The translations under genes and the position numbers were made by a program. The notes under the pieces are model-generated. The model saw only the letters and a program-made list of their open reading frames with translations, was not told where the DNA came from and searched no databases. From contig NC_057726.1 of assembly GCF_004010195.1 (NCBI RefSeq), positions 62,184,850 through 62,248,849 of the forward strand: DNA of 64,000 nucleotides, read 5' to 3'. Source of the DNA: Chiloscyllium plagiosum. Its lineage: Eukaryota. This document shows, piece by piece, positions 8,336-39,370 of this stretch (its first letter is position 1; each line of letters begins with the position of its first letter).

Positions 8336-10508
8336 AATTGGGACTCACACTAAGTAATGAAACACTGAGTACAAAATTTCCCCTTTGGTATTTTTGCCTT
8401 GCAATTGAGCTATTCAGGATTAAAAACTTACAGTCGAAGCATTATTTATGACAGACACAAATGGCGATGCTTCCCTACTAAATGTCGAAGGGCAAAAATT
8501 TCCATGCTTAGGCAGGCTCCCTCCTGTGAAACAAGAGCCAATGCTGACACTAGTGATAGGGACAGGGAGGTACAAATTGCTGAGGGAATTTTGAGCAATG
8601 GGTTATGTTGACACTGACCCTCATGGTGAAACATCCTGACACATTTCCTTTACCTTTCAGTACAAAAGTGCTAGTGTCAATTAATGTTATTCATATCAGT
8701 GAGGTAAGCACCACACATAGTCAATGCTTCATCGTTGCCAGGCATTAGGAGGGTTCGGCCATGGGTATCCGTGTGATATGGTTTCACTGATAAAGACCTC
8801 ATGTCAGAAGATTCCTGCAGCCACCTGCTGCACAAGTGGAAATACTCATTATGTATATTCTTTGTCATTGTGATTCACATTGTGCAGCTCAGAATTCCAG
8901 TAAGATCGAGGAAAACAGTGATAGATCTTTGCCAGCGTGGCTTCCAGGCACCTCCATATTTGAGAGTCCCAGAACATTCAAACTCCTTTATTGATCGTCC
9001 TTCTATTGAACCACCATGGGCTTTAAATCTCCACAGGTCTCCACTTAATCTGTCCATATGTCCACCGCCATGCGCATCCTCACTCACCCCCACTATCTCT
9101 CGTACCTTGGAATATGAGGTGACCATACCGGGCATGGTCTTACACTTATCCTCCTCCTTGCCACAGTGACCGTTACTGCAGATGATCCATGTTTCTCCCT
9201 TACTCCTTTTCTAACTGTCCTTTTACATGACGTGGTCATTCAAACATAGTTGCTGCAACCCTTTCACAATTGTCAGTCCTCCTACCCCACTTAGCCTGAA
9301 GCATCCAGACTGCACGATGAGATTGCCATGACTCCTTCAAGTGACAACAGTCTCCCTATGGTGGTCCCAGGTGAACATAGAAACCAATCTCGACTACTCG
9401 ACCCTTCAGCTATGATCGACCATTGAATAAGATCATGGCCGAACAAATTTTAACCTCGATTTTTCATTCCCTTGGTCATCAACAATCTAACAATTTCTGC
9501 TTTAAATCATTTTAAGGTTCTATATCCACTGCTTTTTGAGCAAAGGGACTCACACTCCTAAGAACATAAGAATATAAGAGCCACAAGCAGATAAAACCAA
9601 TTCCATCCCTCCAGTCAGCTTCGCAATTCGACACAAACATGATTGATTTCCTCTCGTCCTCAACTCCGTTTTCCTGCCCGTTCCCTATTACTCATTCATC
9701 CTCTGAGACATTTTCATTTCTCAGCCACTTTCTGTTTAGTTTCCGTGAACGGACCTAATAGGACAGCTCTGGGCAAGCTGTGGCCAGATTCTTCACTCGT
9801 GTCTATCAATCTGCCGAGTAGTTTTAATCCCGCCCATGGACTAATCTCCGTGAAGCAACAGGACTGGCGATATTCCAGTCCTTAGACTGCAGACTCTGAC
9901 CAAGACCAACCTGATCAGGGACCTCACTTTTCCTTGTCCTTCAGAATTATATTAGAGATTGCTCTTGACTTTATGTTCCAAATCATCCTGAAAGCTTTGT
10001 ACCACTATGGACTACTCCCTTAAGGCTTTGAGACATGGCTGTCTGCTGGCTGCGCATGATAGCCTTTGGCTCATAAACTGTTGGCACTGATTGTAGGGTT
10101 AGACTGATAGAGCACATTGCCTACATCAGGTTCAATGTCCTTTTGATAAAGAATTGCTCATCTGCAAGACAAAGTTGCACGGTTTTGAGACTTCGCTAAT
10201 AGTAGAGCAAAGCATAGATTCTGAGATGATGCAAGAGGTCAGTAACTGAATGCAGGAGACGCGAGCAAACGAGGCAGAATTCCCTGCACTCAAAGTGTCT
10301 TTCCACCCGACTTTCAACACAGGTCATTGGTGCTCTTAACAACATCAACGTAAGATTAATCTGGTATTAGAGTACAAGCACTAACTATTCCTATCTGATA
10401 TATCGCTGCAATACTTATACACGGAGAAGTGAAATTTAACACGCCTGAAGTTCAAATCTGAAAAAAATGCAATCAAAACACGTCCAAATATCTTCTGCGT
10501 CTAATTCG

Positions 10509-10685
10509 TTACGGCTTGCTATTTCTTGCTGGTGCATAGTTATCTTCTGTTCCTTTTCGTCTTCCAGTCTGCAGCGCTGCATACTCTGTGCCTTCTTTGG
10601 GATTGTGGTACTTCTCCGGTTTCATTGGACTACTCAACGTTAGCGCAGAATATGTCACCTTATTAGCGACAGCGTCTTGTGCGAC
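10509..10685 (-). CDS. Exon 7, terminal cytoplasmic exon, ITIM VTYSAL and ITSM-like TEYAAL
   Basis: Acceptor cctttacag. VAQDAVANKVTYSALTL...EGTEYAALQ...NSKP then TAA. Confidence 0.88.
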   Translation of the reverse strand, partial: VAQDAVANKVTYSALTLSSPMKPEKYHNPKEGTEYAALQTGRRKGTEDNYAPARNSKP

Positions 10686-13600
10686 CTGTAAAGGCAGCAT
10701 TTAGAAATATTGTTGAAGTAATATGGAACAGGATGTCCTCAAAGTGGTCATCAGAAGGACATGGAAATGATTTTCCGTATCTCACATGGTCAATGTCAAC
10801 TAAGGCAAATACCTTAACTGACAGGCTGAATCGCGATTTCATCATAATAATGTAAATTCTTCTTTGGTTATTCAGTCTTACCTCGGCGTACGTGCTTCTC
10901 TCTGCTTCAAATATACGTCTTGGAGTTCTCCTGCCTCTGCTGAATTCTACCGCAGTGTATTGCACACCCTCCGACGGCGCTTCCTGCGAGGAACAGATGC
11001 TAAATATTTCATTAAGTCCCTATTTCATGTCTTCAACAATTCGTTCGCCAAGCAGGGAACAAATGTACCCTTGGCCCGACTTCACTTGCAGAATCCACGT
11101 TTCAGATATATTCACGTGATTACAAATACTAATCCATTGTGGTCAATTTTAAAAGCTAAACTTTTTTTCACATGCATTTTGTAACACAATGTTTCAATGT
11201 CAATAAGTGTCAGCATTGGAAAGGATTTAATTTCAATCGAAAGAATGACTGAAAGCATAAAGTGCTATTAGCTAGAAACATTCTCATAAATATGACCAGA
11301 TTTTAAAAATCCAATTAATATTATTTGTCAAAAAGAATATTGCACCAACTGCATTTCAAACATCATTGGGTGAGCATAAACTTCAATAACCTTAAAGCGT
11401 TTTGAGGTGATTAGCATATTTCTGCCATCATTGCATGCGTCCCGGGCATTGCAAACCCCTGTGGTGATGAAGGAATGAACTTACCACCTTGTCACGACGA
11501 TCCGGTTGCCTTATGCATTCTCCATCATCTGCATACCAATGAAATATAATTACACTATGAGATGGAATTATTAATCCAGTTTCCGTATGGAAAACGAAGC
11601 TTTACAATTCTGAACCAAAGCGATAGAAAAAGACTATCAATCTTCAGTTGATACACAACAATAATGAAGAAGGGAGAATATGACATGGTCAACATCAGTT
11701 TCTAATCTTCCTGTTCGTAAAGGAACAATGATTACTCGGAAGAGGAATCACATTACCAGCTTCATTTCTGGCAGGGTACAATTCATTAGTTATGTTCAAA
11801 AGTGACGTTTTTTTGGAAACTAATATTCCTGAGAATTATTAACATTCTGATAACAAAATTATAACTTTTTCTGCGTTATGAAATGGGTCTGGAACAATCT
11901 GAGCTCTCTTAGAAAGTAATCAATTGCGTTTTCAACTTTAAATCATTTGGCATTCTCCAGAACATGCTAATTCCCCTTCATCCCCTTTATTGTCCTCAGA
12001 CTTCAACTGGATCGAAAATCAAGAGTTGACAGTATTTCTTACTTCTGTTAGATCGAAGCCCATATCGCTTTACAATTATGGTCACAAGCACGAGAAACGA
12101 AAATCCAACTGCCGCACAAATTGGAGTCCAGAAAATGAGTGAACTGTTGATACTGTCTGCAAAATTAAGAGGACATTAATTGCTGGTGGTGCTTGGATAG
12201 GAACTATTAAGAACTGTAAGAACCGCATTATTGAAGGGCAGTGAAAAAGCAGAAGTGCCAAATATTCTTTCAGTTGAATGTCGAAATCACTTCCATTTCC
12301 AATTGATGGCAAATTTTGAATCAGTTTCTGGAATGGATTCTTGGTTTGTACATCAAAAAGGACTGTTTTGCAAAGGTCGGGACACAAAACTGAGTGATTA
12401 CCTTTGGTCTAAAATACTGTTCTTCTTGACTTTGTTACGGATTAACACACGTTTTCTTGAAATTAGAGTCATGATCTCACAAGCATTTTCTTCGCTGGTC
12501 ACATCAAATTCTGAAATGGGGCGATCGGTTGACGAACTTTTTGCAAATAAATGAACTGTCTTTTTGATATTCATTGTATAACAAAGGACAGCTACTGTTT
12601 TGTAAATTGTCATTTTATGAGAGGACTAAATATTGTCAAAGTTAATGCATTAACTTTGCCGCACCATAGACAAGTCAAGTCCTCACATAAGCTTTGGGTT
12701 ATGTGTGAGACCCATCCCGTTTGAACGTGCCCTTGAGAGATAATACAGTACTTGATAAGGGACGACTTAGAATTCTGCCCTGGACACAACCAAGTGGGGA
12801 TGCAGGTTGAGCGAACCCAAACAATACAATGACCTCCCTGCAACAGTATAGGGAAAGTAGGCACTCGTCAGGAATGAAGTAATTTTACACGGAAGCAAAA
12901 CTGGTGAATGAGATGATGGCAGAAACGGATGAGGTACAGTTAGTAAGTTTGCAGATGACACCAAAATTGGAGGTGCAGTGGACAGCGAAGACGGTTACCT
13001 CAGATTACAACAGGATCTGAACCAGATGGGCCAATGGGCTGAGAAGTGGCAGATGGAGTTTAATTCAGATAAATGCGAGGTGCTGCATTTTGGGAAAGCA
13101 AATCTTAGCATGACTTATACACTTAATGGTAANNNNNNNNNNNNNNNNNNNNNNNNNNNNNNNNNNNNNNNNNNNNNNNNNNNNNNNNNNNNNNNNNNNN
13201 NNNNNNNNNNNNNNNNNNNNNNNNNNNNNNNNNNNNNNNNNNNNNNNNNNNNNNNNNNNNNNNNNNNNNNNNNNNNNNNNNNNNNNNNNNNNNNNNNNNN
13301 NNNNNNNNNNNNNNNNNNNNNNNNNNNNNNNNNNNNNNNNNNNNNNNNNNNNNNNNNNNNNNNNNNNNNNNNNNNNNNNNNNNNNNNNNNNNNNNNNNNN
13401 NNNNNNNNNNNNNNNNNNNNNNNNNNNNNNNNNNNNNNNNNNNNNNNNNNNNNNNNNNNNNNNNNNNNNNNNNNNNNNNNNNNNNNNNNNNNNNNNNNNN
13501 NNNNNNNNNNNNNNNNNNNNNNNNNNNNNNNNNNNNNNNNNNNNNNNNNNNNNNNNNNNNNNNNNNNNNNNNNNNNNNNNNNNNNNNNNNNNNNNNNNNN

Positions 13601-15662
13601 NNNNNNNNNNNNNNNNNNNNNNNNNNNNNNNNNNNNNNNNNNNNNNNNNNNNNNNNNNNNNNNNNNNNNNNNNNNNNNNNNNNNNNNNNNNNNNNNNNNN
13701 NNNNNNNNNNNNNNNNNNNNNNNNNNNNNNNNNNNNNNNNNNNNNNNNNNNNNNNNNNNNNNNNNNNNNNNNNNNNNNNNNNNNNNNNNNNNNNNNNNNN
13801 NNNNNNNNNNNNNNNNNNNNNNNNNNNNNNNNNNNNNNNNNNNNNNNNNNNGACAGCAGGAGTCTTTAGGGAGACGTGAGATACTGAACAGGTATACATG
13901 GTATTACTAGAAGGAGATTGAAACACAGCCAACGAACTGGATACTTCATACAGCCCCTCGCTGTTCTGCACTTTATTAGTATTTATTCCGACTGTAGTTT
14001 CGGAGCCGTTTATATACCAGGCGAGAGTGAAATCCTCCGGATAAAATGGAACTGTTTCACACAGAAGGGTCAAAGAAACTGGTGAGTTTTCTTTATTTAA
14101 CCTGGACGTAATTTTCAGTGGTACTGGGGAAACTGCATGAAAAGAATTGAAAAAGCCATGTTATTGGAAAACCGGAAAATGTTAAATTTGAGTATGCTTT
14201 TCAACCGCTCTGTTTTATCACAATCTCAGCATTCAAAGACGCAGCTTATTGTCTACATAACTTTATGTGCAAGCTTTCGAACTGTGGCATTTATTCACTT
14301 TTACTTGAAGTATCGGCTCCAATACTTGCTTTTTCTCAGCAGAAGAAAACTACAATTTGCTTAGCACTGTTTGTCTCTTGTATTTGAATAACTTAATTCA
14401 AATGAGCCCGGGCAGTGGAAAGGACAAAGAAAATAATTTTCATCAGCCCTTGTGCTTTGACGCTCACATGAAGAGGAACGATGAAAATGCTGCTTATCGT
14501 TCAAATGACGATTATTACGTTAGCCAAATTTCAAAACCAAAGTATTGTTACTGAAGAAATATATTAAATCTGTTGAACCTCAGGAGCTACAGATTCTCTG
14601 TATTGTTTTAGATACTGATTGGAGGGCACTGAATCTACTGCGTTGTATGCTTCAAAATGTGACTTCTTTTGCATTGCTCCCCTTTATCAGTAAGTAACTT
14701 CACTCTGGTTTTCAAGCCATAACGCGGAAATTATGTAAAAGTTAATTTCTGTCCGCTTCAACCTCAGAAGGGGTAATTGGAGGTAGTCAGGACATCAATA
14801 ACACACCACAGACTAGCTACATTGTTGTGCTACGATTTACATAAGTTGCTTGTTTTCGAGTATATGTGTCGTAAATTCTGCTGGTAAACACCTGGTATTT
14901 AAGGTGCCTTTGGAATTATAATGGTTAATAGTTACAAAAGTTTCAGTTTTCTGCCTGTGATATTGATTGTCCAATTACAATACTTTCAAGAGAATCGAAT
15001 TACCAAGTGTAGGTCGCCGCTCAAACGATCAGTCCCCATGATTAAACTGCAAACGCTCATGAAATAAGCGACCAGAAAATATCTTGTTACTTCGAAATAT
15101 TTCACACAGTTTGCTCTCTCACTTACCGTGCACAAGCAAATGGGAACCAGTTCCATTTATTTGACCTATTCTTTGATAAATCACACCGCAGTGGTAGACT
15201 CCAGAATCTCGAATGGTAACGCTCAGCAAGTTACAGAAAGCTGACGTTTCATTGTCAGCACCAACTCGTTTTCTGAAACGCCTCTGAAAATGATCATTTC
15301 CAATCTGCTTCCACCAAATAACCTTTGGTTTTGAACGGGGCCGAGAGCTGGGGAATGTGCAGCGGAAGATAACGTCCTCCCGTCTGTTCACAGTTATTTC
15401 TTTGGGCGTTTGAGTAACACTGAACGAAGTGTGATCCGCAGCTGTTAGAAACAAAGTAAGATACAGATAACTGTCGTATACGGCATCAAGATAGAAGAAT
15501 TCAATACTTCAACAGAGAGATGAATTAATATTCTTTAAATGAACGAGGAGCTGTTTCGAAAGCCTTTAATTAATTAAAGCAGATCTGTCAATTAAATAAG
15601 CAAGTACCGGTAAGAATAGACTCAAGTAGAATCAAACCGAGAAAATTCATCCTCGCTGTCAT
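10509..15662 (-). CDS. Spliced gene (7 visible exons): inhibitory IgSF receptor, SP-V(J)-C1-TM-ITIM tail, SIRP-like
   Basis: Exons 15608-15662, 15127-15441, 14132->gap, 12043-12156, 11485-11528, 10882-10983, 10509-10685. All visible boundaries are canonical AG/GT with compatible phases (1,1,[1],1,0,0) and no stops. The same layout recurs in the paralog at 34-39 kb. Confidence 0.9.
10882..10983 (-). CDS. Exon 6, cytoplasmic, ITIM VQYTAV and STYAE|V
   Basis: Acceptor ttcctcgcag, donor GAG|GTAAGA, 102 nt, phase 0/0. EAPSEGVQYTAVEFSRGRRTPRRIFEAERSTYAE. Confidence 0.88.
11485..11528 (-). CDS. Exon 5, short cytoplasmic exon (NDGECIRQPDRRDKV)
   Basis: Acceptor ggtatgcag, donor GTAAGT. 44 nt converts phase 1 to the phase 0 needed by the next exon; a degraded counterpart lies at ~34859-34900. 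Confidence 0.75.
12043..12156 (-). CDS. Exon 4, stalk and uncharged transmembrane segment
   Basis: Acceptor aattttgcag, donor A|GTAAGA, 114 nt, phase 1/1. xSINSSLIFWTPICAAVGFSFLVLVTIIVKRYGLRSNR with KR stop-transfer. Confidence 0.88.
12933..13132 (+). mobile_element. CR1 RT fragment in the C1-TM intron (continues into gap)
   Basis: SKFADDTKIGG...WAEKWQMEFNSDKCEVLHFGK. Confidence 0.92.
13133..13851. other. Assembly gap (719 N)
   Basis: Run of N; ORFs spanning it are artefacts. Confidence 1.
13852..14132 (-). CDS. Exon 3, C1-set Ig domain (3' end runs into assembly gap)
   Basis: Acceptor cttttcatgcag. LLCETVPFYPEDFTLAWY...GLYEVSSSL...YTCSVSHVSL carries the C1 signatures CxxxxFYP, W, YxCxVxHxSL. 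Confidence 0.93.
15127..15441 (-). CDS. Exon 2, V-set Ig domain with J-like G strand
   Basis: Acceptor tttctaacag, donor G|GTAAGT, 315 nt, phase 1/1. VTQTP..FRC..WW..DSGVYHC..INGTGSHLLVH. Confidence 0.95.
15608..15662 (-). CDS. Exon 1, signal peptide MTARMNFLGLILLESILT
   Basis: ATG (cat 15660-15662; second in-frame ATG 15648-15650), hydrophobic core, phase-1 donor G|GTACTT. Confidence 0.85.
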
Positions 15663-15728
15663 TCTAAGCAAAGGATTCAACTGACAACTCTGTACAGTTC
15701 GTGCGAGTTGGTAACTGCTGAGATTCTT

Positions 15729-15768
15729 TTCCGGTTTGTTTTCTACTAGATATGTCACAATGACGTTT
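15729..15768 (-). promoter_or_regulatory. Putative proximal promoter: ETS core (AACCGGAA) plus CRE/ATF half-site (TGACG)
   Basis: ttccggtt 15729-15736 and atgacgttt 15760-15768, both conserved at matching positions upstream of the paralog. Confidence 0.6.
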
Positions 15769-18119
15769 AACATTCTGAGAGTGTGTTTGGTAATTTGAAC
15801 CTCATATGTTCAATATTACTTTGTAGTTTCTGTGTTTATTTCACGTCTGAAATCACACGTATCACTGGAAACAAAGTTTCGGAAAAGTCATTTCATTTTG
15901 AAATACAAAGTTAACTCACACTGCTCATGTCCGTACTGTTTCTAAACACGAGTTGATTTGACTCCATCGTTCTCCTGGTCAGTGCGTCCAGATCTTAACC
16001 ACAATTTTGGGCACGTGGCACTTGTTTTGACTTTTATCATAATGGAAGGATCTGGTTCTTGTAATTTCCGTTAATGTGATCAACAACCTATTATCATTCC
16101 TTTCCGAGTTCTTATAATATGAACAATGGCATCAAATCTCGTCTCAACTTTCTCTCCATAAATGAAAATTGCCCGAGTTTCTCCACTAACTTCCTCCTTC
16201 ATCCATGGAATCAGGCATGTTTTGTGTCAGTCATCTCTCAATGAGTTGGGATTTCCTTTCTGTGCTAGAATTTTCTGGGTGCAAATTACACTCCAGGAAG
16301 AGAAGACAAAAGCCAGGAATGACAGTAATGAAACATATTGCATTGGCAGGGGTGCCGCCTTTCCAATGGATGTTAAATAATCCATACAGATTTTTTTTCA
16401 AAGAAGCGCACTGGAATTATTGGCGTTCTTGCCAGTATTTGCGCTTCATTCAGGATAAAAACGCAGATTTTTTTTAAACGGATTGCCGATTGCAGATGTT
16501 GGTAGGGTATGATGTCTGCTGCTTTTTTTTTAATGACAATGAATGCACTTGTAAAATAATCCATTGAGTGCAACGTGATGTCGGAATTACAACCGCCCTG
16601 CAAAAGAAATTGAACGCTTTGCGTCATTCTTACAACTTGTTTCAGCTCAATTTCGAAATGTATTCATACCGTTCCGGACGGGCAAAGCCCAGAAATCTAC
16701 GCAATGCAGCAGTTCAGTCCGAGCCGTGTTTGGTAAATCTGCACCAGAATTTCTTTGCCTTAGTAGAATATGGTCATACTTATAACGCCAAGGACTGAGG
16801 ACGAATTATTCATAATTTGCTCTACTTACTCTGTCACTTTCGCCAATCCGTGCACAAATATCCCTGGTCCCTCTACAGTGGAACTCAAAGTAAGACTGTT
16901 CCTTTCATTTGATATTGTCTCCTCGTGTTTTTCGCTGGTTTCTATCTTTCCTACAAGTGCAGCAATTTCGATTTGATTCTGCGCGCATTAGGTTTGCTCT
17001 CTGCCTTGCTTCCTGAGACATTATTAAAATGTTTTCGAAGTCCCATATATCAGAACATCCAAACTGTAATCATCAACATTGTGTATTACTAAGGAAAGGC
17101 ATAATCAAGTTAATGAGACATGCTTTGCTTTTAGGAAATGCGGACTGATTCCAGATAGGGGCAGGAGTGGGCCATTTGGCCCCTCAAACCTGCTCCAACG
17201 TTTAATATGATCATGGCTAATCATCCAGCTCAGTACCCTGTTTCTGCCTTCTACTCATACCCTTTGATCTCTTTATCTCTAAGAACTGTTTCTAACCACT
17301 TCATGAAAACATTCAACTGGTTTCTATAACAAAGTATTACTATCTCTGGTTGAATGAACTTCTATCCGAAATATGGATTCTGACTGTGTTCAGGGGCCTA
17401 ACAATGAATGCAACCAGATAACGCTGGATAAAGGAGAATAAGCGTTGAAGCATCTTCGATCATTTGAAATGCCCAGGGCTTTGGACAGTTTGAGAAAGGG
17501 GTGACTACATTATTAGCCACTGTCATAGACGTGCAGACTATAACCTGTGCCTTTGATTGACGTCGTATTGGTTTTTATGACAGAGGATGGAAAGAGAGCA
17601 GTGAAGAGAAAACCGGGTGGTGACATGCAACAAAGGTTGACGAGGTAATAGGGAAAAGGAAGACTAAGATGCAGCAGCATATTGCAAGTTGAGCGTGCAA
17701 ACAACTGTATCGACTATCAGAAGCAGTGTTGAGCCAAATATGGGTGGTTTTCAGTTTGGAAGTTCACATATTTGAAATACTAGCTAAATTATGAACCCAC
17801 GAAGGCAAGTGAACCCAATTTGAATAGGCGCAATGGAGGACATGGTGTAGGGCTCCAGCAGTGCAGTAGTGCTGTTCTTAACTCTGAACCAGGAAACCTC
17901 ATGCCTTGACTGCTTCAAACGTGTGTAATAATGTCTGAAAATATTGAATAGAATTTGTCTGGCGTGCACGATACCCTAATCAGAAAGTTTGAATTTTTTT
18001 AAACTCAGGAATTGAGGAACTTTCAAGGCACTGTGCGAGCTAAAGAAGTTAGAATTTGTTTTTTTTTGCCAAGTAATGTAATCCTCGTATTTCGATTTTC
18101 CTAAAACATTAAATAACTT

Positions 18120-23039: not shown

Positions 23040-26000
23040 GTTAGAGGCAATGAGAAACTTACAAGAGCAAGGGGGTGTAATAGATGGCAGCTATAGGAAG
23101 GGATAAAAGTTTCAGATACAGTCACATGATGGGGTAACTCCAGGAAAGGTAAGAGAGTATTGGAAAATATAGGGGGTGGTAGGTTCTCAGGGGGGTGTAG
23201 CATGAACAGACACATTTCTGGTATTGAGACTAGCTCTATTGCAATGAGGGGTACGTCGGGTTCCAAGAGAACAGTTGTGTTAAGGGACTATCTAGTCCGA
23301 TGTACAAAGAGATGTTTCTGTGGCCAGCAGTGAAAAATCAGAATGGTGTGTTGCTTCCCTGATGCTATCATCAAGGATGTCTCAGAGAAGGTGCAGAATA
23401 TTTTCAAGCGGGAGAAGGGCCAGCAGTACGTCATTATATACATTGGAACCAATGGCATAGGAAGGGAAAAGGTTGAGATTCTGAAGGGAGATTACAGACA
23501 GTTAGGAAGGAATTTAAAAAGGAAGTCGTCGAGAGTAGAAATATCTGGATTACTCCTGGTGCTACGAGGTAGTGAGGGCAGGAATAGGAGGATAGAGCAG
23601 ATGAATACATGACTGAGCAGCTGGTGTATGGGAGAAGAATTCGCATTGTAATCTCTTTTCGGGGAGAAGTGACCTGTACATAAAGGACGGATTGCACCTA
23701 AATTGGAAGGGGACTAATATACTGGCAGGGTGATTTGTTAGAGCTACTCATGTAAATTTAAGCTGGTAAATTTGCAGGGTGTGATCCAGGGAGATGGAGA
23801 AGAAAGAGATCAATCTGAGACTCGTACAGTTGAGAACAGAAGCGAGTCAAACAGTCAGTGCAGATAGGGACAAAGCAGACAACAAGGGAGGACTGATAAA
23901 TTAAAATGCATTTATTTCAACGCAAGGGGCCTAACAGGGAAGGCAGATGAACTCAGGGCATGGATAGGAACATGGGACTGCGATATCGTAGCAATTACAG
24001 AAACATGGCTCAGAGATGGACAGGTCTGGCAGCTTAACTTTGCAGGATACATATGCTAAAGGAAAGATAGAAAGGGGGCAAGAGAGGAGGGGAGTGGTGT
24101 TTTTGATAAGGGATAACATTACAGAGAGGATGTTCCCAGAAATATATCCAGGGAAGTTATTTGTGTGGAAATGAGAAATAAGAAGAGGATGACCACCTTA
24201 CTGGGATAGTATTATAGACCTCCTAATAGTCAGAGGGAAATTGAGAAACAAATTTGTAAGGAGATCTCAGTTATCTGTAAGAATAATGGGGTGGTTATCA
24301 TAGAGGTTTTTAACTTTCCAAACAGAGACTGGGACTGCCATAGTGTTAAGGGTTTAGATGGAGAGGAATTTGTGTAGAAGAAAATTTTCTGATTCAGTTT
24401 GTGGATGTACCTACTAGAGAAGATGCAAAACTTTACCTACTCTTGGAAAATAAGACAGGGCAGGTGACTGAGGTGTCAGTCGGGGAGCACTTTGGGGCTG
24501 GTGATCAAATTCTATTAGTTTTAAAATAGTGATGGAAAAGGATAGGCCAGATCTAAAAGTTGAAGTTGTAAACTGGAGAAAGGCCAATTTTGACGGCATT
24601 AGGCAAGAGCTTTCAAAAGCAGATTGGGGCAAATTGCTCACAGGTAAAAGGATGGCTGGAAATTGGGAAGCTTTCAGACATGAGATAATGAGAGTCCAGA
24701 GAAAGTACTTTCCTGGTAGGGTGAAAGGAAAGACTGGTAGGTATAGGGAATGCTGGATGACTAAAGAAATTGAGGGTTTGGTTAAACAAAACAAGGAAGC
24801 ATATGTCAGGTATAGACAGAATCGATCGAGTAAATCCTTAGAAGACAATAGAAGATTTAAGAGGGAAATCAGGAGGGCAAAAAGGGGACATGAGATCGCT
24901 TTGGCAAATAAAGTTAAAGAGAATCCAAAGCGTTTTTACAAATACATTAAGCACAAAAGGGTAACTCGTGAGAGAATAGGGCCCCTCAAAGATCAGCAAG
25001 GCAGCATTTGTGCAAGGGAGCAAAGATCAGCAAGGGAGCCGCAGAAAATGGGGGGAGACACTAAACGAGTATTGTGCATCAGCACGTATTGTGGAAAATG
25101 ACATGGAAGATATAGAATGCAGGGAAATAGACGGTGACAACTTGAAAAATGTTCATATTACTGAGGAGGAAGTGCTGGATGACTTGAAATGCATAGATCT
25201 GACGAAATACAGGGAGGACTTGCCAATTGGATACAGAACTGTCTTCAAAGTAGATGACAGAGGGTGGGGTGGAGGGTTGTTTGTCATACTGGAAGCCTGT
25301 GACCAGTGGAGTGACACAAGGATCGGTGCTGGGTACCCTACTTTTTGTGATTTGGATGAGCGCATAAGAGGTATACTTAGCAAGTTTGCAGATCAAACCT
25401 AAATTGGAGGTGTAGTGGACAGCGAAGAAGGTTACCTCAGATTACAACAGGATCTTGATCAGATGGGCCAATGGGCTGAGAAGTAGCAGATAGAGTATAA
25501 TTTAGATAAATGCAAGGTGCTGCATGTTGGGAAAGCAAATCTTATCAGGACTTATACACTTAATTGTGAGGTCCTAGGGAGTGTTGCTGAACAAAGAGAC
25601 CTTGGAGTGCAGGTTCATAGCTCCTTGAAAGTGGAGTCACAGGTAAATAAGACTGTGAAGAAGGCATCTGGTATGCTTTCTTTTACTGGTCAGAGTGTTG
25701 AGTACATTAGTTGGGAGGTCCAGTTGCAGCAGTACAGGACATTGGTTATGCCATTGTTGGAATATTGCGTGTAATTCTGGTCTCCTTCCTATGGAAAGAT
25801 GTTTAAGAACTTGAAAGGTTTCAGTAAAGATTTACAACGATGTTGCCAGGTTTGCAGGATTTGAGCTATTGGGAAATGGCTGAACAGGCTGGGGCAACTT
25901 TCCCGGAGCGTCGGAGGTTCAGGGGTGACCTTATAGAGATTTACAAAATCATGAGAGGCAAGGATAGGATAAGTAGACTTTTCCCTGGGGTGGGGGTGTC

Positions 26001-26300
26001 CCGAACTGGAGGATATAGGTTTCGAGTGTGAGGGGAATGATATAACAGAGGTCTTAGGGAAAACCTTTTCATGCAGAGGGTGGTATTTGTAAGGAATGAG
26101 CTGTCAGAGGAGGTGGTGGAGGCTGGTACAATTGCAGCATTTAAAAGGTATTTGGATGGGTATATGAATAGGAAGGGTTTGGAGGGATATGGGCCAGGTG
26201 CTGGCAAGTGAGACTAGATTGGGTTGGGATATCCGGTCAGCATGGATGGGTTGGACCGAAGGTCTGTTTCCGTTCTGTACATCTCTATGACTCTATCTGA
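23040..26300 (+). mobile_element. CR1 LINE: ORF1 esterase, endonuclease, internally deleted RT, 3' tail
   Basis: VCCFPDA..IGTN, DIVAITETWL, NPKRFYKYIK, KFAD, tail atctctatgactctat; many stops. Confidence 0.95.
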
Positions 26301-26829
26301 ATCTGTCTCTTTAACAATGATGTAAAGAATATTTGTAATATAATTTATCTTAGCAAAAAGTCGTAAAGTGACAATAATAACATTTAATTAAGTAGATGGC
26401 CTCTGGGATAACTGACAACTTAAAAAATCAGTAAAGAGACAGTAGGAGGTGATAACTTCCAAATTCCATAATCCTTAAGAGCCAGTTAGAAATTGAGTTT
26501 GCATCCATCGAGATAAGAAACATAAAAGATAGAAGCAGCAGTTGGGTATTTGAATCCTTGAAGCTGCATCACCATTCAATGTTATCGTGACTGGTCATGA
26601 AGCCTAGTCCCTTGATCCTGCCCTCCCCTCCATCTCTTGATCCCCTTAGCCACGGCAGATATGTCTACCTCCTTATTGAAAGTGCATGATGTTTTCACCT
26701 CAACCATTTTCTGTGGTCGCAAATTCCATAGGGTCAACACTCTCCGGGTGAACAAATTTATCTTCATCTCAGTTACTTCTACTCATCTCATTTTTGTCTA
26801 TTCTCATCGCTTAAGCCAATTTGTAATAG

Positions 26830-27185
26830 GTCTTGCTCATCCGAGGCCAATCAGAATACAACGACGGAATTGAGCATGCTGTATTTTTTTTTGTGGCTTG
26901 GAAACGGTTAAAACACTAAAGCTTTTGAAGTAAAGGCACGCATGAGAGTTTCAAATTATACTGCTTCGAGTTGGACATGGAATGTTCTTAAGGCATTGGA
27001 GAGAGACTGAGAAACCAAATGCACCATTAGCAGAATCAGAGATCAAGAGCCCAAATATCTGTAAAGTCTCTGTCCCGCTTGAATAGGTAGTACTTATAAC
27101 CTAAACAAAGTTACCTGAGTTATTACACAAAACTGTCTCTTGTTTCCTTATTTGAGTGTAAGACCCCTGAAACTTGCAAAACACC
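26830..27185 (+). repeat. Diverged repeat shared with 51445-51835
   Basis: Colinear blocks aatcagaat..ggaattga.catgctgt, aaggcattggagagaga.tgagaaaccaa, tgagt.taagacccct. Confidence 0.7.
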
Positions 27186-27837
27186 TGCCAGTGGGATACA
27201 ATTTCAGAAGTTTAGGTGAACACAAGGCCAGGGGGATTCGCTTCAGTGGTCAAGGGCATTCAACCTCGGATCTTCAGGTGAACATCCTCCAAGGCAGACT
27301 TCGGGACATGTGACAATGCAGAGTTGCTGAATAGAGGCTGATAATCATGTTCGGTATTCATGAGGCCAATGTCAACCCGGATATTAAGTTCATATCATAC
27401 TACAGATTACCTGACCACACTATACACACAATCAAATGCACCGGCACATGCACATGCACACTTTCACATAAACACACACATACGGCCCCTCTCCCATACA
27501 CACAACACATTCACACTCACGCTTTCTCACACACACATACTCCCACACACTCACTCACGCTCTGTCTCAAGCACACACCCACACTCACATGCATGCTCTC
27601 ACAAAAGATATACTCCCACACAGTTACACACACTCTATCTCTCAAGCACACACTCTCTCAAGAGCATGTGCACACAAACACACACACTCTTTCCATCAAA
27701 CACACCCTCTCACACACAAGTTCTCCCTCTCTCTCCCTCACACACACATGCACACACAGATATAAATCTATGGGGTGAATTTGCATTGGCAGATTTATAT
27801 TTGTAGATGGACTCTATTATGTTCAAAAACCACACAA

Positions 27838-30240
27838 AGAAGGAGTCAGGAAGGTTGATGAGGGCAGAGCAGTAGACCTCATCTATATGGATTTCAGTAA
27901 GGCCTTTGATAAGATTCCGAGTGGAAGGCTGCTTTGAAAGGATAGAATTCAGGAAATCCAGGGGGAGTTGGCAAACGAGGTACTCAATTGACTTGATGGT
28001 AGGAAGCACAGGGTAATAGTGGAAGGATGTTTGTTGGACTGGAGGCCTGTAACTAGTGGCGTGACTCAGGGGTCGTTGCTGGGCCCATTGGTTTTGTTGA
28101 CTATATTAATGATTTGGTTGAGAATGTACAAGGCATGATCAATAAGTTTGTAGATGACATTAAAATAGGTGTGGAAGGTTATCAGAAAATGCAGCAGGAT
28201 ATTGATCAACTGGGGAAGTGGGCCAAGAAATGGCAAATGAAGTTTAATATAGATAAGTGTGAGGCGTTGCATTTTGGAAAGTCAAATCAAGATAGGAGTT
28301 TCACGGTGAATGGTTGAGCCTTAAGGAGTGTAGTGGAACAGGGGGACCTTGGAGGTCAGGTTTCACAGTTCTCTGAAAGTGAAGTCACGGGGAGACAGGG
28401 TAATGAAGAAAGCTTTTGGCACACTGGCCTTCATCAGTCAGATCATTGAGTATAGACGTTGGGAAGTTATGTTGCAGTTGTATAGGACATTGGTGAGACT
28501 GCGTTTGGAGTATTGTGTTCAGAATTGATCATCTTGCTATAGGAAGGATGTTATTAAACTGGAAATAGTGCAGAAGAAATTTACGAGGACGTTTCTAGGA
28601 CTCAACTGTCTGAGTTATGGGGAGAGATTAGACAAGATAGGACATTTTTCTTTTGAGCACACGAGACCGAGGAGCAATCTTTTACAAGTGTATAAGGTGA
28701 CCTGGACAATACATGTTAATGATATAGAAGATGGTATCAGCAATAACATTAGCAAATTTGCTAATGATACAAAGCTGGGTGGCAGGGTGAAATGTGATGA
28801 GGATGTTAGGAGATTACAGGGTGACCTGGACAAGTTAGGTGAGTGGGCAGATGCATGGCAGATGCAGTTTAATGTGAATAAATGTATGGTTATCCACTTT
28901 GGTGGCAAGAACAGGAAGGCAGATTACTACCTCAATGGAATCAGTTTAGGTAAAGGGGCAGTACAGAGAGATCTGGGTGTTCTTGTACACCAGTCAATGA
29001 AGGCAAGCATGCAGGTACAGCAGGTAGTGAAGAAGGCTAAGAGCATCCTGGCCTTCATAACAAGAGGAATTGAGTATAGAAGCAAAGAGGTGCTTCTGCA
29101 GCTGTACAGGGCCCTGGTGAGACCAATCCTGGAGTACTGCGTGCGGTTCTGGTCTTCAAATTTGAGGAAAGACATTCTGGCTATTGAGGGAGTGCAGCGT
29201 AGGTTCACGAAGTCAATTCCTGGAATGGCGGGATTACCTTACACTGAAAAACTGAAGCGACTGGGCTTGTATACCCTTGAGTTTAGAAGACTGAGAGGGG
29301 ATCTGATTGAGACGCATAAGATTATGAAAGGATTGGACACTCTGGCAGCAGGAAACATGTTTCCGCTGATGGTGAGTGCCGAACCAGAGGACTCAGCATA
29401 AAAATACGGGGTAGACCATTTAGGACAGAGATGAGGAGAAACTTCTTCACCCAGAGAGTGGTGGCTGTGTGGAATGCTCTGCCCCAGAGGGCAGTGGAGG
29501 CCCAGTCTCTGGATTCATTTAAGAAAGAGTTGGATAGAGCTCTCAAGGATAGTGGAATCAAGGGTTATGGAGATAAGGCAGGAACAGGATACTGATTAGG
29601 AATGATCAGCCATGATCATGTTGAATGGCGGTGCAGGCTCGAAGGGCTGAATGCCCTACTCCTGCACTTATTGTCTATTGTCTATTTTTGTGTGAGGCAT
29701 GGGTAGGGTGAATGTACTCAGTCTTTTTTTCCAGGCTTAGACAATCGAGGACTACAGAGCATCACTTTAAGTTTAGAGGAGAGAGAATAAAAGAGAACCT
29801 GAGGGGCAACATTTTTACACAGAGGGTAGTAAGCATATGGAATGAGCTGCTAGTGGAAGTTGTTGAGGTGGATACATTAACAACATTTAAAAGGTAGTTA
29901 GATAAACACATGGATAGGAATGGAATAGAAGGATCCACTGTACTCTGGGCTAGTGAATTCCACTGATTCATGATCTTTAGAGAGAATTAAAAAGGGACAT
30001 TTAAGCAACTCTTGGATAGGTACATGGAAGATAATACAATGAAGGGCATATATTAGAGGAGGATAAAAGGTCGGCACAACATCGAGGGCTGAATGGTCTT
30101 TATTGTGTCATACTGTTCTATTTTCTATAAGGATAGGGGTCAAGTGCGGGGAAGTGGAGTTAGTGTACATGGACATTTTTTTGTGGCAAGGATCAGTTTG
30201 GACCAAAGGGCCTGTCTCCATGTTGTAGGACACTGTAACT
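27838..30240 (+). mobile_element. CR1 RT/3' region (host of further insertions)
   Basis: YMDFSKAFDK, KFVDD, KWQMKFN; interrupted at ~28698-29689 and ~29935-30128. Confidence 0.9.
28706..29686 (+). mobile_element. Younger 5'-truncated CR1 of a different subfamily, nested
   Basis: Long open frame SKFANDTKLGG...WQMQFN...LVRPILEYC; tail ttgtctattgtctat. Confidence 0.92.
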
Positions 30241-32237: not shown

Positions 32238-33090
32238 AGTTAAAAATCACACAACACCAGGTTATAGTCCAACAGGTTTAATTGGAAGCACACTAGCTTT
32301 CGGAGCGACGCTCCTTCGTCAGATAAAAGTGGAGAGCTCGATCGTAACACTGAATTTATAGCAAAAAATTGCAGTGTGATGTAACTGAAAATATACATTG
32401 AAAAAGTGATTGTCTGTTAAGCCTTTCATCTGTTGGAATACGGTAATAGTTTCACCTCTTTCATGTGTAAATCACAAACCTTTTTTTTTAAATTGCATAC
32501 TCGGGTCAGCTGTTAACAATGGTGATAGCTAGACAATAAGTTGAAGGTGTTAGCCCCCTGTGTTCTCTGTCTATGACCTGATATTTAGATTGATTCTAAT
32601 CTAAAAAAAAAGATAACAGAGTTTTACATAAATTCAAGCAGTTTTTGAGCTCAGAGTTCTACATGAATGTATGCAGTTTTTGAGCAAAGTGCAATGTAAC
32701 TCTGCAAGTACAAATTCACACCACAAAATATATGTGTGCATGTTGGTCTTTGTGTGTGTGTGTCTGTCTGGGGTAGGGGTTGTGAGTGTGAGAAGGTGTG
32801 TGTTTGTGTAGTGAGTGCAGAGTGTCTTAAGTCTGTGAGGGGGTGCATGTGTGAGTGTGGGAGTGCGTGTGTCTATAAGGGTGTGTGTGGGTGCCTGTGT
32901 GCACGTCTGTGTTAACCTGTGTCTGTGTGTATGTGAGAGTGTGTGTGTAGGAATATCTGTGTGTGTGTGTCTAGTGCAATGGTTATCACCTGTAATGTGA
33001 CATGAACCCAAGGTCCCGTTTGAGGCCCTCCCTATGGGTACCGAACTTAGCTATCAGCCTCTGCTCAGCCACTTTCCTCTGCTGCATGTA
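32238..33090 (-). mobile_element. Penelope-like 3' end with pseudo-LTR
   Basis: EQRLIAKFGTHREGLKRDLGFMSHY at ~32995-33070, TG tract, hammerhead-like core near the terminus. Confidence 0.85.
32298..32322 (-). ncRNA. Minimal hammerhead-ribozyme-like motif in Penelope pseudo-LTR
   Basis: CTGACGA-A-GGAGC-GTC-GCTCC-GAAA on the minus strand. Confidence 0.55.
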
Positions 33091-37415: not shown

Positions 37416-37649
37416 TTACTGTTATTGACTTGGTGTATAAAAGGAAAGAATGTTTGCGGAGAATGACTAATAGTTGGTGATTTAAAGTATTGATAAGAAA
37501 TTGCCTTCAATTTTAATGTTTGCCTTAATATATTAGAAAGGATTTCCGTGAACACTCTTCCTGAATAGTAAGAACCACAAAGTTTACGCTTGAGATCTGG
37601 ATAAACTGTACAGGAAGCTGGCTCTCCTTTTTGCACTGTTAGCTTCCTA

Positions 37650-37952
37650 CTTCAGGGATCGTATGTGAAGCAGTACCTGAAGTCTGCAGTGAGCTAGGAA
37701 AGGTGAACAGATATATCTGGTGTTACTTGGGATAAATTGCATCTCAACCAAAGAGTTGGAAACTCCATTCAGCCCATCGGGGTTCTTCGCATTAGTTATA
37801 CGTATCACTATTGCGTTCTCAATGTCATTTTTATATCAGGTGATCGTGAGTTCCGACGGATGAAATGCAGCTATTTCACACGCGAGAATCAGAGACAACA
37901 GTGGAATTCATTTCAAGTGGCCTGCAGGCAATCCACAGTGAGCTTGGGGTCG
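37650..37952 (-). pseudogene. Paralog C1 exon, disabled
   Basis: SLILACEIAAFHPSELTIT*YKN...NPDGLNGVSNSL...SNTRYIC. Core Trp is TGA (37836-37838); frameshifts present; 3' boundary approximate. Confidence 0.9.
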
Positions 37953-38918: not shown

Positions 38919-39216
38919 CATTTACGCATCAGTGTGATCCGATCCTTGTTGAATACTGTACAGTAATGAAGACCAAATTCTTGGATAGTCACTTGCAGCA
39001 AGCATAGGAGAGCACTCCTTTCACGGCTAACACCAAATTGCTTTCTGCTATTGCCGGGGATTGGGAATTAATTCTCGCCCTGTTTCCACCAATGCTCATT
39101 TATCGAGGAATCCTCCCCAGAGGTGGGAAAGAAGCAGATCAAGGCGATATTCTTCCTTCTGGATATAAATACTTCTTTAGGTTTTTGAATAACACCGAAA
39201 ACAGCGTGTTCCTCAG
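38919..39216 (-). pseudogene. Paralog V exon, disabled
   Basis: EEHAVFGVIQKPKEVFISRRKNIALICFFP...WWKQGEN*...LLQVTIQEFGLHYC...GSH*CVN. Acceptor AG->AA, TAA at 39068-39070, deletion before the G strand. Confidence 0.92.
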
Positions 39217-39370
39217 TTGCCAGAAAATAGGGTCATAGATAATTTAATAGTACTGGGCAAAGCATGCAGATCGAAGAGGGAGAAAAGATCTTATTTTGCG
39301 GAATTATATTTCGGTAAATAAATATACGATAAATTGATTTAGGTAGGGTGATGATCAAAGAGGTATTTAC

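What the first reader, a model, noticed from the sequence alone, without database searches (positions are those of the whole stretch)
10509..15662. Non-rearranging VJ-C1 inhibitory receptor gene with a four-tyrosine SIRP-alpha-like tail
Seen: seven in-phase exons give SP, V domain ending INGTGSHLLV (GxG J-like strand in the same exon as V), one C1-set domain, an uncharged TM and a tail with VQYTAV, STYAEV, VTYSAL and TEYAAL. The ORF track misses the TM and first cytoplasmic exons. Established: C1 domains are largely confined to Ig/TCR/MHC/b2m, tapasin, B7-H6 and SIRP. SIRP-alpha is V-C1-C1 with four tyrosine motifs; TCR and Ig light chains are VJ-C1. Inference: this is a shark germline-encoded receptor with an antigen-receptor-chain ectodomain wired to SHP-1/2 signalling, a candidate uncharacterised NK/myeloid receptor family relevant to antigen receptor origin.
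Basis: partly seen in the sequence, partly recalled or inferred. Interest (0 to 1): 0.9.

Follow-up and report, generated by a model that had tools for sequence, protein, structure and literature searches.

The report
Shark SIRP-like V-C1 inhibitory receptor gene
This is a shark gene for a cell-surface protein that looks outside like one antigen-receptor chain and carries inhibitory signalling motifs inside; it belongs to a large, apparently unstudied family in sharks, rays and chimaeras.

Summary
On the minus strand, seven exons (15662 to 10509) encode a leader, a V domain with a J-like end in the same exon, a C1-set domain, an uncharged TM and a tail with four ITIM/ITSM-type tyrosines in two pairs 23 residues apart. 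All visible splice sites are canonical and the phases agree. The 3' end and donor of the C1 exon lie in the assembly gap, so intactness is unproven. The closest full-length relative predicts about 13 hidden codons, not a second Ig domain.

This is not a lone gene. In 30 of 30 clusters looked up, its relatives are predicted proteins of sharks, rays and the chimaera. They carry machine-given names (SIRP-alpha-like, tapasin-related-like, NCR3LG1-like and others). The scan noted the same kind of gene elsewhere in this genome; none of those notes was followed up. A dead paralog lies 23 kb away.

By profile score the V-C1 pair is as near to Ig light chains as to SIRP-alpha. True SIRP orthology is unresolved, and the V-C1-C1 architecture is not met.

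No RNA read fell on the exons, but that test was weak. I found no paper on the family, though three key papers were not held.

Verdict: a real gene, probably an inhibitory receptor, and a new variant of a known kind. Interest is moderate.

The parts
15608..15662 (-). Leader exon (coding part): ATG at 15662, 18 codons plus 1 base, donor GT at 15607-15606. This is a split leader, completed in the V exon.
   Evidence: 94% identical over 18 residues to the Chiloscyllium punctatum model P0001, which uses the same leader-to-V junction.
15127..15441 (-). V(J) exon, phase 1 to phase 1. It has Cys (FRC), WW(K), D-S-G-V-Y-H-C and the J-like N-G-T-G-S-H-L-L-V. There is no C'' strand in the model.
   Evidence: Pfam V-set 38.9 bits, I-set 25.7. 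AlphaFold2 of this exon gives mean pLDDT 88.8. Best fold match is the IgNAR V domain 8ht3_A (Z 14.7, rmsd 2.2, 97 aligned), tied with NCAM Ig1, CD79b, TCR V and Ig VL. No RSS-like site nearby.
13852..14132 (-). C1-set exon, visible part (2 bases plus 93 codons). Its 3' end and donor are hidden in the gap.
   Evidence: Pfam C1-set 47.3 bits against C2-set_2 23.4. F-Y-P, exactly 13 residues between the B-strand Cys and the Trp, and C-S-V-S-H are read against the criteria quoted in PMC2785349. 75% identical to P0123.
13133..13851 (.). Assembly gap (719 N). It hides the end of the C1 exon, its donor and part of the C1-TM intron. It was not filled or looked up.
   Evidence: P0123 has 13 residues between the last visible residue and the TM-exon match. 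Run X1 has a joint from 12930 to 13852.
12931..13132 (+). Fragment of a very high-copy LINE-type element (reverse-transcriptase piece) in the C1-TM intron, running into the gap. It is not part of the gene.
   Evidence: Weak RVT_1 match of 17.7 bits, below the cut-off. Summed contig depth is about 2,000,000 in DNA run X1, against 5-80 elsewhere. Many loose ends fall at 12931. The piece is skipped by the bridging contig.
12043..12156 (-). Stalk/TM exon, phase 1 to phase 1: an N-S-S site, a hydrophobic stretch L-I-F-W...T-I-I-V without a charged residue, then K-R-Y-G-L-R-S-N-R.
   Evidence: 43% identical over 35 residues to P0123 residues 236-270.
11485..11528 (-). Cytoplasmic exon 1 (phase 1 to 0), 14 full codons.
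   Evidence: 10 of 12 residues identical to P0123 residues 274-285.
10882..10983 (-). Cytoplasmic exon 2 (phase 0 to 0): VQYTAV, plus S-T-Y-A-E, which is completed by the V of the next exon. The two tyrosines are 23 residues apart.
   Evidence: 41% identical to P0123 residues 287-315, where VQYSAV is kept and the second motif is not.
10509..10685 (-). Cytoplasmic exon 3 with the stop codon: VTYSAL and TEYAAL, tyrosines 23 residues apart.
   Evidence: 74% identical over 42 residues to the C-terminus of P0123, which keeps VTYTTL and TEYAAL.

Best explanation
The locus is a germline-joined (non-rearranging) V(J)-C1-TM gene. It belongs to a large multigene family that, as far as these searches reach, occurs only in cartilaginous fish.

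The predicted product is a type I membrane protein. Its ectodomain has the layout of a single antigen-receptor chain: a short V domain with a J-like G strand, then one C1-set domain. Its roughly 115-residue tail carries two pairs of ITIM/ITSM-type tyrosines, 23 residues apart within each pair.

The most likely mechanism is inferred, not shown. Ligand binding by the V domain brings the tail near Src-family kinases. The paired phosphotyrosines then dock the tandem SH2 domains of SHP-1/SHP-2, which damp activation of the cell that carries the receptor, as SIRP-alpha, PECAM-1 and PD-1 do.

Shown here: the exon structure, the domain types, the motifs and their excess over chance, the collinear homology to predicted proteins of other species, the family's size and range, and a dead paralog nearby. 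Inferred: expression, cell type, ligand, phosphatase recruitment and intactness across the gap.
For: Exons, phases and splice sites.

Domains: V-set and C1-set by Pfam. The three sequence criteria for C1-set domains quoted in PMC2785349 are all met in the letters.

Motifs: 3 within-exon motifs against 0.14 expected. Spacings of 23, 14 and 23 residues are read.

Homology: exon-by-exon matches to the zebra shark model P0123 are collinear. They cover leader 1-17, V 20-124, C1 127-219, TM 236-270 and tail 274-285, 287-315 and 322-363, with identities of 65, 55, 75, 43, 83, 41 and 74%.

Family size: the V exon finds 121 proteins at E<=0.001. Of the 130 proteins then stored, 54 have both V and C1 matches. 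Of those 54, 21 carry at least one ITIM/ITSM-type motif, including 20 of the 26 with a tail of 40 or more residues.

Range: all 30 of 30 clusters looked up come from sharks, rays or Callorhinchus.

Trees: the window groups with Chiloscyllium punctatum and Stegostoma (SH-aLRT 98-99). This clade sits inside a subfamily shared with Heterodontus, Heptranchias, Scyliorhinus, Mustelus and rays.

Structure: the model of P0123 has an ectodomain mostly above pLDDT 90. Its best Foldseek matches are Ig light chains (E about 4e-16).

Other: no RSS-like site lies at the gene. The nearby paralog has in-frame stops, as expected of birth-and-death evolution.
Against: No RNA read lay on any exon in X5 (about 2 in 100 of the run read), X6 (nothing laid at all, so no test) or X7. 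Expression and every junction are therefore unconfirmed in this species.

The end of the C1 exon and its donor are hidden by the gap. A repeat fragment abuts the gap, so a lesion cannot be excluded.

One of the four motifs (STYAEV) is not kept in the closest full-length relative.

Many family members have short tails without motifs, so an inhibitory function is not a family constant.

ITIM-like motifs also occur in ligand-type molecules. Phosphatase binding is an inference from motif knowledge.
Confidence: 0.7

Rival explanations
1. It is the cartilaginous-fish (co-)orthologue of SIRP-alpha: the same gene lineage as the mammalian CD47 receptor, with one C1 domain lost or not yet duplicated.
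For: Machine-given names of many relatives are 'tyrosine-protein phosphatase non-receptor type substrate 1-like'. The family profile aligns with SIRP-alpha 2wng over the whole V-C1 pair (profile 24-216, 67.3 bits), and its C1 part also matches domain 3 (47.4 bits). SIRP-gamma aligns likewise. The four-tyrosine, two-pair tail recalls SIRP-alpha; that comparison is from memory.
Against: The V-C1-C1 architecture is not met. Ig kappa (71.5 bits) and Ig lambda (69.0 bits) V-C pairs score as high as SIRP-alpha. With a V-only profile no SIRP chain is among the best 60, while shark V-NAR, TCR V and CD79b are. No bony-vertebrate SIRP was recovered by the word-indexed searches, though those searches are insensitive. 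No synteny and no tree with SIRP references could be made.
Confidence: 0.15
2. It is a ligand-type molecule of the B7-H6 (NCR3LG1) kind. It would be displayed on potential target cells and read by the expanded NKp30 (NCR3) receptors of sharks, with the tail motifs serving reverse signalling or trafficking.
For: B7-H6 is a V-C1 molecule. Several relatives are machine-named NCR3LG1-like or CD276 homolog. The best VIA-align match of the two-domain model is B7-H6 4zso_E (Z 16.8, rmsd 4.0, 193 aligned, 20% identity). Nurse shark has several NCR3 genes, whose accessions are listed in the methods of PMC12227049. Co-variation of NKp30 and B7H6 gene numbers 'from sharks to mammals' is recalled from Flajnik et al. 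2012, which was not held.
Against: The B7-H6 match is tied within 1-2 Z units with many unrelated V-C pairs such as Rst, Neph1, PD-L2, nectins and butyrophilins. No B7-H6 chain is among the best 60 of the family profile, whereas SIRP-alpha and SIRP-gamma are. The conserved J-like G-x-G strand and the repeated paired ITIM/ITSM motifs are more typical of receptors.
Confidence: 0.12
3. This copy is a silent or broken gene: an unexpressed member of a birth-and-death family with a lesion hidden in the gap or in its control region.
For: No RNA read lay on the exons. The gap and a LINE fragment sit exactly where the C1 exon must end. A dead paralog with in-frame stops lies 23 kb away.
Against: All 1,088 visible coding bases are open, and all 11 visible splice sites are canonical. 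The tail tyrosines are conserved against zebra shark. The contig of DNA run X1 that bridges the gap region is single-copy and skips the repeat, which places the repeat in the intron. The diverged copy seen in X1 also has no stop at the 19 listed coding differences. The RNA test was weak: single-cell libraries, read at 2-6 in 100.
Confidence: 0.15

Closest known systems
SIRP-alpha (PTPNS1/SHPS-1) and the SIRP family
   Same: It has an N-terminal V domain with a J-like strand encoded in the V exon, followed directly by C1-set domain(s), a TM and a tail with four tyrosines in ITIM-type contexts arranged as two pairs. The family mixes long-tailed and short-tailed members. The profile aligns over the whole V-C1 pair of 2wng at 67.3 bits.
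   Different: There is one C1 domain instead of two. The V domain is shorter and has no C'' strand in the models. Sequence distance to SIRP is no smaller than to Ig light chains. Orthology, synteny and CD47 binding are untested.
Ig light chains and TCR chains (rearranging VJ-C1 chains)
   Same: The layout is the same: V + J-like strand + one C1 domain, with a split leader. Ig kappa and lambda V-C pairs give the highest single-stretch profile scores (71.5 and 69.0 bits). Ig light chains are the best Foldseek matches.
   Different: V and J are joined in the germline and there is no RSS. The tail carries its own signalling motifs rather than a short tail that relies on partner chains. There is no charged TM residue. 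No conserved stalk cysteine is visible in this copy.
UrIg and UrIg2 (non-rearranging shark VJ-C1 genes; PMC12227049)
   Same: They are non-rearranging, have VJ in one exon and a split leader, have C1-type constant domains, and occur in cartilaginous fish.
   Different: Nurse shark UrIg2 has nine C domains (section 7 of PMC12227049), whereas this gene has one. UrIg2 V-C1 scores lower (56.8 bits) than IgL or SIRP-alpha against the family profile. No ITIM is mentioned in that paper (0 occurrences). Linkage to the MHC or the antigen-receptor complex could not be tested here.
B7-H6 (NCR3LG1)
   Same: It has a V + C1 ectodomain, a TM and a tail with tyrosine motifs, and its gene number expands in some lineages. 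It is the top VIA-align match (Z 16.8).
   Different: The match is tied with many V-C pairs. B7-H6 is not among the best 60 profile matches. It is a ligand rather than an inhibitory receptor.
IgNAR V domain (V-NAR)
   Same: It is a short V domain without a C'' strand and with a J-type G strand. It is the best whole-domain profile match including the J part (4hgk_C, 55.8 bits, profile 2-119). It is also the best fold match of the window's V exon (8ht3_A, Z 14.7).
   Different: IgNAR V is assembled by rearrangement and sits on a five-C-domain heavy chain. Identity is only about 19-22%, and the fold match is tied with I-set and other V domains.
NITRs of bony fish
   Same: They are a multigene, fast-evolving, non-rearranging VJ receptor family with ITIM-bearing and short-tailed members (recalled).
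   Different: The second NITR domain is I-type, not C1, and NITRs are known only from bony fish (recalled). Here the second domain meets all three C1-set criteria.

Membership tests
SIRP family | V-set domain with a J-like G strand encoded in the V exon | tested here: met
   N-G-T-G-S-H-L-L-V ends the V exon, directly before the donor. Pfam V-set scores 38.9 bits.
SIRP family | Two membrane-proximal C1-set domains (V-C1-C1) | tested here: not met
   There is only one C1 exon. tblastn finds no other between 10 and 16 kb. P0123 goes from C1 to TM in 13 codons. The bridging contig leaves at most 266 letters. The caveat is the gap itself.
SIRP family | Tail with four tyrosines in ITIM-type motifs that recruit SHP-1/2 | tested here: inconclusive
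   The motifs and their paired spacing are present. Phosphatase binding cannot be tested with these tools.
SIRP family | Orthology by tree and by conserved neighbours; CD47 binding | not testable with these tools
C1-set domain class | (F/Y)(F/Y/H)P at the BC loop, 13 residues between the B-strand Cys and the C-strand Trp, and x-V-x-H after the F-strand Cys (criteria quoted from PMC2785349) | tested here: met
   F-Y-P, 13 residues (E-T-V-P-F-Y-P-E-D-F-T-L-A) and C-S-V-S-H are read. Pfam C1-set scores 47.3 bits.
Rearranging antigen-receptor chains (IgL, TCR) | Separate V and J segments flanked by heptamer-spacer-nonamer signals | tested here: not met
   V and J-like parts are contiguous in one exon. 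None of the window's 12 loose RSS-like matches lies in 10000-16500.
UrIg / UrIg2 | VJ exon with split leader followed by several C1-type domains | tested here: not met
   The VJ exon and split leader are met, but there is a single C domain here against nine in nurse shark UrIg2. The profile score to UrIg2 V-C1 is 56.8 bits, below IgL and SIRP-alpha.
UrIg / UrIg2 | Linkage to the MHC (UrIg) or to the IgH/TCR-alpha-delta complex (UrIg2) | not testable with these tools
   The window holds only this gene, a dead paralog and repeats. The earlier notes on MHC genes that the look-up listed are all on other pieces of the genome (unchecked notes).
B7-H6 (NCR3LG1) | V + C1 ectodomain | tested here: met
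B7-H6 (NCR3LG1) | Specific sequence kinship with B7-H6; binding to NKp30 | tested here: inconclusive
   The fold match at Z 16.8 is tied with many others. B7-H6 is not in the best 60 of the profile search. Binding is not testable.
Tapasin / TAPBPR | Large N-terminal domain ahead of the Ig domains | tested here: not met
   The leader is followed at once by the V exon. Newt TAPBPR is only a 59-bit match and sits on a branch of 1.86-2.25 in the C1 tree.

The most novel reading that the evidence does not exclude
The family is not a side branch of SIRP. It would be a surviving lineage of the non-rearranging VJ-C1 receptor that Hatherley et al. (PMC2785349) postulated as the primitive antigen receptor: a self-signalling, single-chain V-C1 receptor. 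Its V domain is nearest to IgNAR/TCR V and its C1 nearest to light-chain C. In cartilaginous fish it would have been kept and multiplied as a polymorphic set of inhibitory and short-tailed receptors for self or pathogen ligands. That would put an extant model of the pre-RAG receptor, with its signalling tail, into experimental reach.
Probability: 0.15. Interest if true: 0.8.

Novelty: new variant of a known kind. Interest (0 to 1): 0.55.

Why it matters
C1-set domains are nearly confined to molecules of antigen recognition. A V domain joined to a J-like strand and followed by C1 is the layout expected of the ancestor of Ig and TCR chains (PMC2785349; PMC10751288; PMC12227049).

A cartilaginous-fish family with that exact single-chain layout, in many copies and with its own inhibitory tail, would add a third non-rearranging VJ-C1 lineage beside SIRP and UrIg/UrIg2. 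It would also give comparative immunologists a candidate NK/myeloid-type inhibitory receptor system in the oldest jawed vertebrates, where such receptors are poorly known.

Three things temper this. The relatives are already in public protein sets under machine-given names. Expression and ligand are unknown. The relation to SIRP and B7-H6 is unresolved.

Tried and rejected
1. RNA support. One run search and one laying of reads. No exon read appeared in X5, X6 or X7; only the LINE fragment was covered. This is not evidence of silence. X5 and X6 are single-cell libraries read at about 2 and 6 in 100, and X6 laid nothing at all.

2. Bringing SIRP, B7-H6, TCR or IgL references into the session for trees. 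The family-profile search gave 17 proteins at E<=1e-5 and 18 at E<=10, out of 7,113 candidates. Fourteen were cartilaginous-fish relatives. The rest were an Oreochromis multi-Ig protein, newt TAPBPR, a Colossoma MUC18-like protein and one unnamed protein. The tail-only search gave 1 of 54 candidates, from the same species as the query. The trees are therefore within-family only.

4. A micro-exon reading of 12893-12930. One minus-strand frame is open there and ends at a GT in phase 1. I rejected it because an alternative zebra shark model (P0002) reads through the C1 donor, which shows that the C1 exon itself carries the 13 stalk codons and splices straight to the TM exon.

5. Direct abutment of 13852 and 12930. 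I rejected this because the resulting residues are unlike every relative, and the 85-letter side of the joint fits a contig with up to 266 letters between.

6. Poly(A) signal. The nearest minus-strand AATAAA below the stop is at 8987-8992. The motif is no more frequent in the window than in shuffles (70 against 71), so it is uninformative.

7. ESM Atlas and fold searches. These returned only generic V-C or V-type neighbours and did not discriminate between families.

8. Papers. Searches found no description of this family. One search was wasted on 'AgR-like', which matched bacterial agr papers.
- Passages or sections read: PMC12227049 (abstract, all of section 7, passages), PMC10751288 (passages), PMC3964593 (one reference-list passage), PMC11599192 (passages) and PMC2785349 (abstract and passages).
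- Not held, so recalled only: PMC6761025, PMC3709836 and PMC10530332.
- Supplements were never asked for. The supplementary tables and figures of PMC12227049 and PMC10751288 might list such genes.


Full report
WHAT IS THERE. The window is AT-rich, repeat-laden vertebrate DNA. Its long ORFs are mostly LINE reverse-transcriptase or endonuclease pieces. The finding lies on the minus strand.

Reading the frames codon by codon and tabulating the borders gives seven exons:
- leader: 15662-15608
- V(J): 15441-15127
- C1: 14132-13852, running into the gap
- stalk/TM: 12156-12043
- three cytoplasmic exons: 11528-11485, 10983-10882 and 10685-10509, with the stop at 10511-10509

All six acceptors are AG behind pyrimidine-rich tracts. 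All five visible donors are GT, and four of them read GTAAG. The phases (1, 1, 1, 1, 0, 0) fit one another. I did not build or search the joined protein; everything below was done exon by exon.

THE GAP, TESTED FIRST. The only N run of the window is 13133-13851. The visible C1 exon ends on a codon boundary at 13852, just after the C1 hallmark Y-T-C-S-V-S-H and K-T-P-A-V. The end of that exon and its donor are therefore unread, and frame continuity cannot be shown.

Two indirect tests bear on it.

(a) The closest full-length relative is the zebra shark model P0123 (363 aa). It has 13 residues between the last visible residue and the first residue matched by the TM exon. A second zebra shark model (P0002) reads through a donor at exactly that point. 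The gap should therefore hide about 13 codons plus one base, and not another domain.

(b) In DNA run X1, one 589-letter contig at single-copy depth (16.4) lies on 13852-14089 and also on 85 letters ending at 12930. At most 266 letters lie between. The contig skips both the gap and the stretch 12931-13132. That stretch is a high-copy LINE fragment. Its summed depth is about 2,000,000, many loose ends fall at 12931, and it has a weak RVT_1 match.

My reading is that the two sides are physically continuous, that the repeat sits in the C1-TM intron or is absent in that individual, and that there is no room for a second Ig exon. I did not use any letters from that contig.

DOMAINS. Pfam gives these scores:
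- V exon: V-set 38.9 bits (cut-off 26), I-set 25.7 bits.
- C1 exon: C1-set 47.3 bits (cut-off 21), CD80-like C2-set 23.4 bits.

The C1 exon meets all three sequence criteria for C1-set domains quoted in Hatherley et al. 2009 (PMC2785349). It has F-Y-P at the BC loop, exactly 13 residues between Cys and Trp, and x-V-x-H after the F-strand Cys (letters).

The V exon has the B-strand Cys, W-W-K, D-S-G-V-Y-H-C and N-G-T-G-S-H-L-L-V. That last stretch matches the J consensus FGxGTx(L/V)xV, as quoted in PMC11599192, at G, G, L and V, with S in place of T and N in place of F.

V and J-like parts are one exon. None of the window's 12 loose heptamer/nonamer matches lies in 10000-16500. The gene is therefore non-rearranging by construction.

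An AlphaFold2 model of the window's V exon is confident (mean pLDDT 88.8) and shows no C'' strand. Its best fold match is a skate IgNAR V domain (Z 14.7, rmsd 2.2, 97 aligned). That match is tied within one Z unit with NCAM Ig1, CD79b, TCR V-beta and Ig VL.

TAIL. The TM stretch has no charged residue. The tail holds VQYTAV, S-T-Y-A-E|V (across the cy2/cy3 junction), VTYSAL and TEYAAL. The tyrosine spacings are 23, 14 and 23 residues, that is, two pairs.

Shuffling each tail exon on its own 20,000 times gives a mean of 0.14 motifs against the 3 within-exon motifs observed. Only 0.00025 of the shuffles reach 3.

From memory, a spacing of about 22-26 residues is what the tandem SH2 domains of SHP-1/2 use on SIRP-alpha, PECAM-1 and PD-1. 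That is the basis of the proposed mechanism, and it is inference.

RELATIVES. The V exon finds 121 proteins at E<=0.001 among 1.84 billion representatives. The best is an 82% identical fragment from Chiloscyllium punctatum that uses the same leader-to-V junction.

The exon-by-exon matches to zebra shark P0123 are collinear. Their identities are 65, 55, 75, 43, 83, 41 and 74%. This is the strongest support for the exon model in the absence of RNA. Three of the four tyrosine motifs are kept in P0123.

Of the 130 proteins then stored, 54 have both V and C1 matches. Of these, 21 carry at least one ITIM/ITSM-type motif, including 20 of the 26 with a tail of 40 or more residues. Many others are short-tailed or are fragments. 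These counts rest on a crude TM finder.

All 30 of 30 clusters that I looked up come from cartilaginous fish: Chiloscyllium, Stegostoma, two Scyliorhinus species, Mustelus, Heterodontus, Heptranchias, Carcharodon, Hypanus, Hemitrygon, Narcine, Amblyraja, Pristis, two Mobula species and Callorhinchus. The 14 family hits add Leucoraja. Their names are machine-given and disagree with one another: SIRP-alpha-like, SIRP-beta-1-like, tapasin-related-like, NCR3LG1-like, MHC class II beta-like, Ig lambda-like and CD276 homolog.

Within-family trees of V and of C1 put the window with C. punctatum and Stegostoma (SH-aLRT 98-99). This clade sits inside a subfamily shared with other sharks and rays, which has weaker support of 84-93. 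V-only fragments from many species end in H/C/Y-G-K, meaning they run into the same G|GTAAG donor.

CLOSEST KNOWN. A profile of 26 family members was searched against the PDB. The single-stretch scores for a V-C pair were:
- Ig kappa: 71.5 bits
- Ig lambda: 69.0 bits
- SIRP-alpha 2wng: 67.3 bits, covering the whole pair; its third domain adds 47.4 bits
- shark UrIg2: 56.8 bits

A V-only profile puts multi-domain I-set proteins first, because their domain scores add up. Among whole-domain matches that include the J part, the best is shark V-NAR at 55.8 bits, followed by TCR V-delta, CD79b and TCR V-beta/alpha. No SIRP chain is in the best 60.

A model of P0123 (ectodomain mostly above pLDDT 90) finds Ig light chains first by Foldseek, at E about 4e-16 and 20-23% identity. 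By VIA-align it finds B7-H6 first, at Z 16.8, tied with many V-C pairs. Its C1 half matches MHC class II and Ig C domains at rmsd 1.2-2.0.

It is about as far from SIRP as from light chains. I could not bring SIRP, B7-H6 or TCR sequences into the session, so no deciding tree was made.

AGAINST. No RNA read lay on any exon, though the test was weak. The C1 exon end is unread. The family is already in public protein sets. Three papers most likely to mention such genes were not held, and supplements were closed. 'Not in print' therefore rests only on the searches.

CONTEXT. A paralog at about 37.6-39.3 kb has in-frame stops in both its V and its C1 exon. Contigs of DNA run X1 differ from the window by 3-4%. 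Of the 19 listed coding differences, 12 change the residue, none makes a stop, and all the tyrosines are kept. That copy is either an allele or a near paralog of a fast-evolving gene. Earlier notes of this scan list the same kind of gene 7.4 kb beyond the window, 672 kb before it, about 7 Mb beyond it, and on other pieces. These notes are unchecked and I did not test them.

VERDICT. This is a real gene, probably intact, and a member of a large cartilaginous-fish family of germline VJ-C1-TM receptors with inhibitory-type tails. It works most probably like SIRP-alpha, but it does not meet the V-C1-C1 definition and is not shown to be a SIRP orthologue. It is a new variant of a known kind, of moderate interest.

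Noticed in passing
window 37620-39330, minus strand: A diverged paralog of the same family, about 38% identical in V and in C1. It has an in-frame stop after W-W-K-Q-G-E-N in the V exon, no J-like G-x-G end, and a stop in place of the conserved Trp of the C1 exon. It is a pseudogene, consistent with birth-and-death evolution.
   Followed up: partly
window 12931-13132, plus strand, running into the gap: A fragment of a LINE-type element at extreme copy number (summed depth about 2,000,000 in a DNA run). It is also covered by reads of a single-cell RNA run and is skipped by a single-copy DNA contig that bridges 12930 to 13852. The insertion may be polymorphic, or the gap may be an assembly effect of the repeat.
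   Followed up: partly
window 10420-10766, 13852-14089, 15488-15800: Contigs of DNA run X1 differ from the window by 3-4%. Of 19 listed coding differences, 12 change the residue and none makes a stop. All tail tyrosines are kept, and T-E-Y-A-A-L becomes I-E-Y-A-A-L. The tail contig has about twice the depth of its neighbours (39.6 against 16-20). This is either an allele or a collapsed near-identical paralog.
   Followed up: partly
proteins P0002/P0122/P0144 versus P0123 (Stegostoma tigrinum models): The same or nearly the same zebra shark gene has models that read through the C1 donor and end after 28 further residues without a TM. This is a possible secreted isoform, or a model artefact.
   Followed up: no
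family proteins P0052 and P0089: Two relatives (the one looked up is from Amblyraja radiata) carry two C1 matches. The number of C1 domains therefore varies within the family, and a V-C1-C1 form like SIRP exists in at least one ray.
   Followed up: no
window 24500-29400, 44200-47200, 53000-53700, 61700-63600: Several LINE reverse-transcriptase and endonuclease ORF pieces lie on both strands, along with low-complexity H/T-rich ORFs at 27350-27800 and 32630-33010. No other cellular gene was seen in the window.
   Followed up: partly
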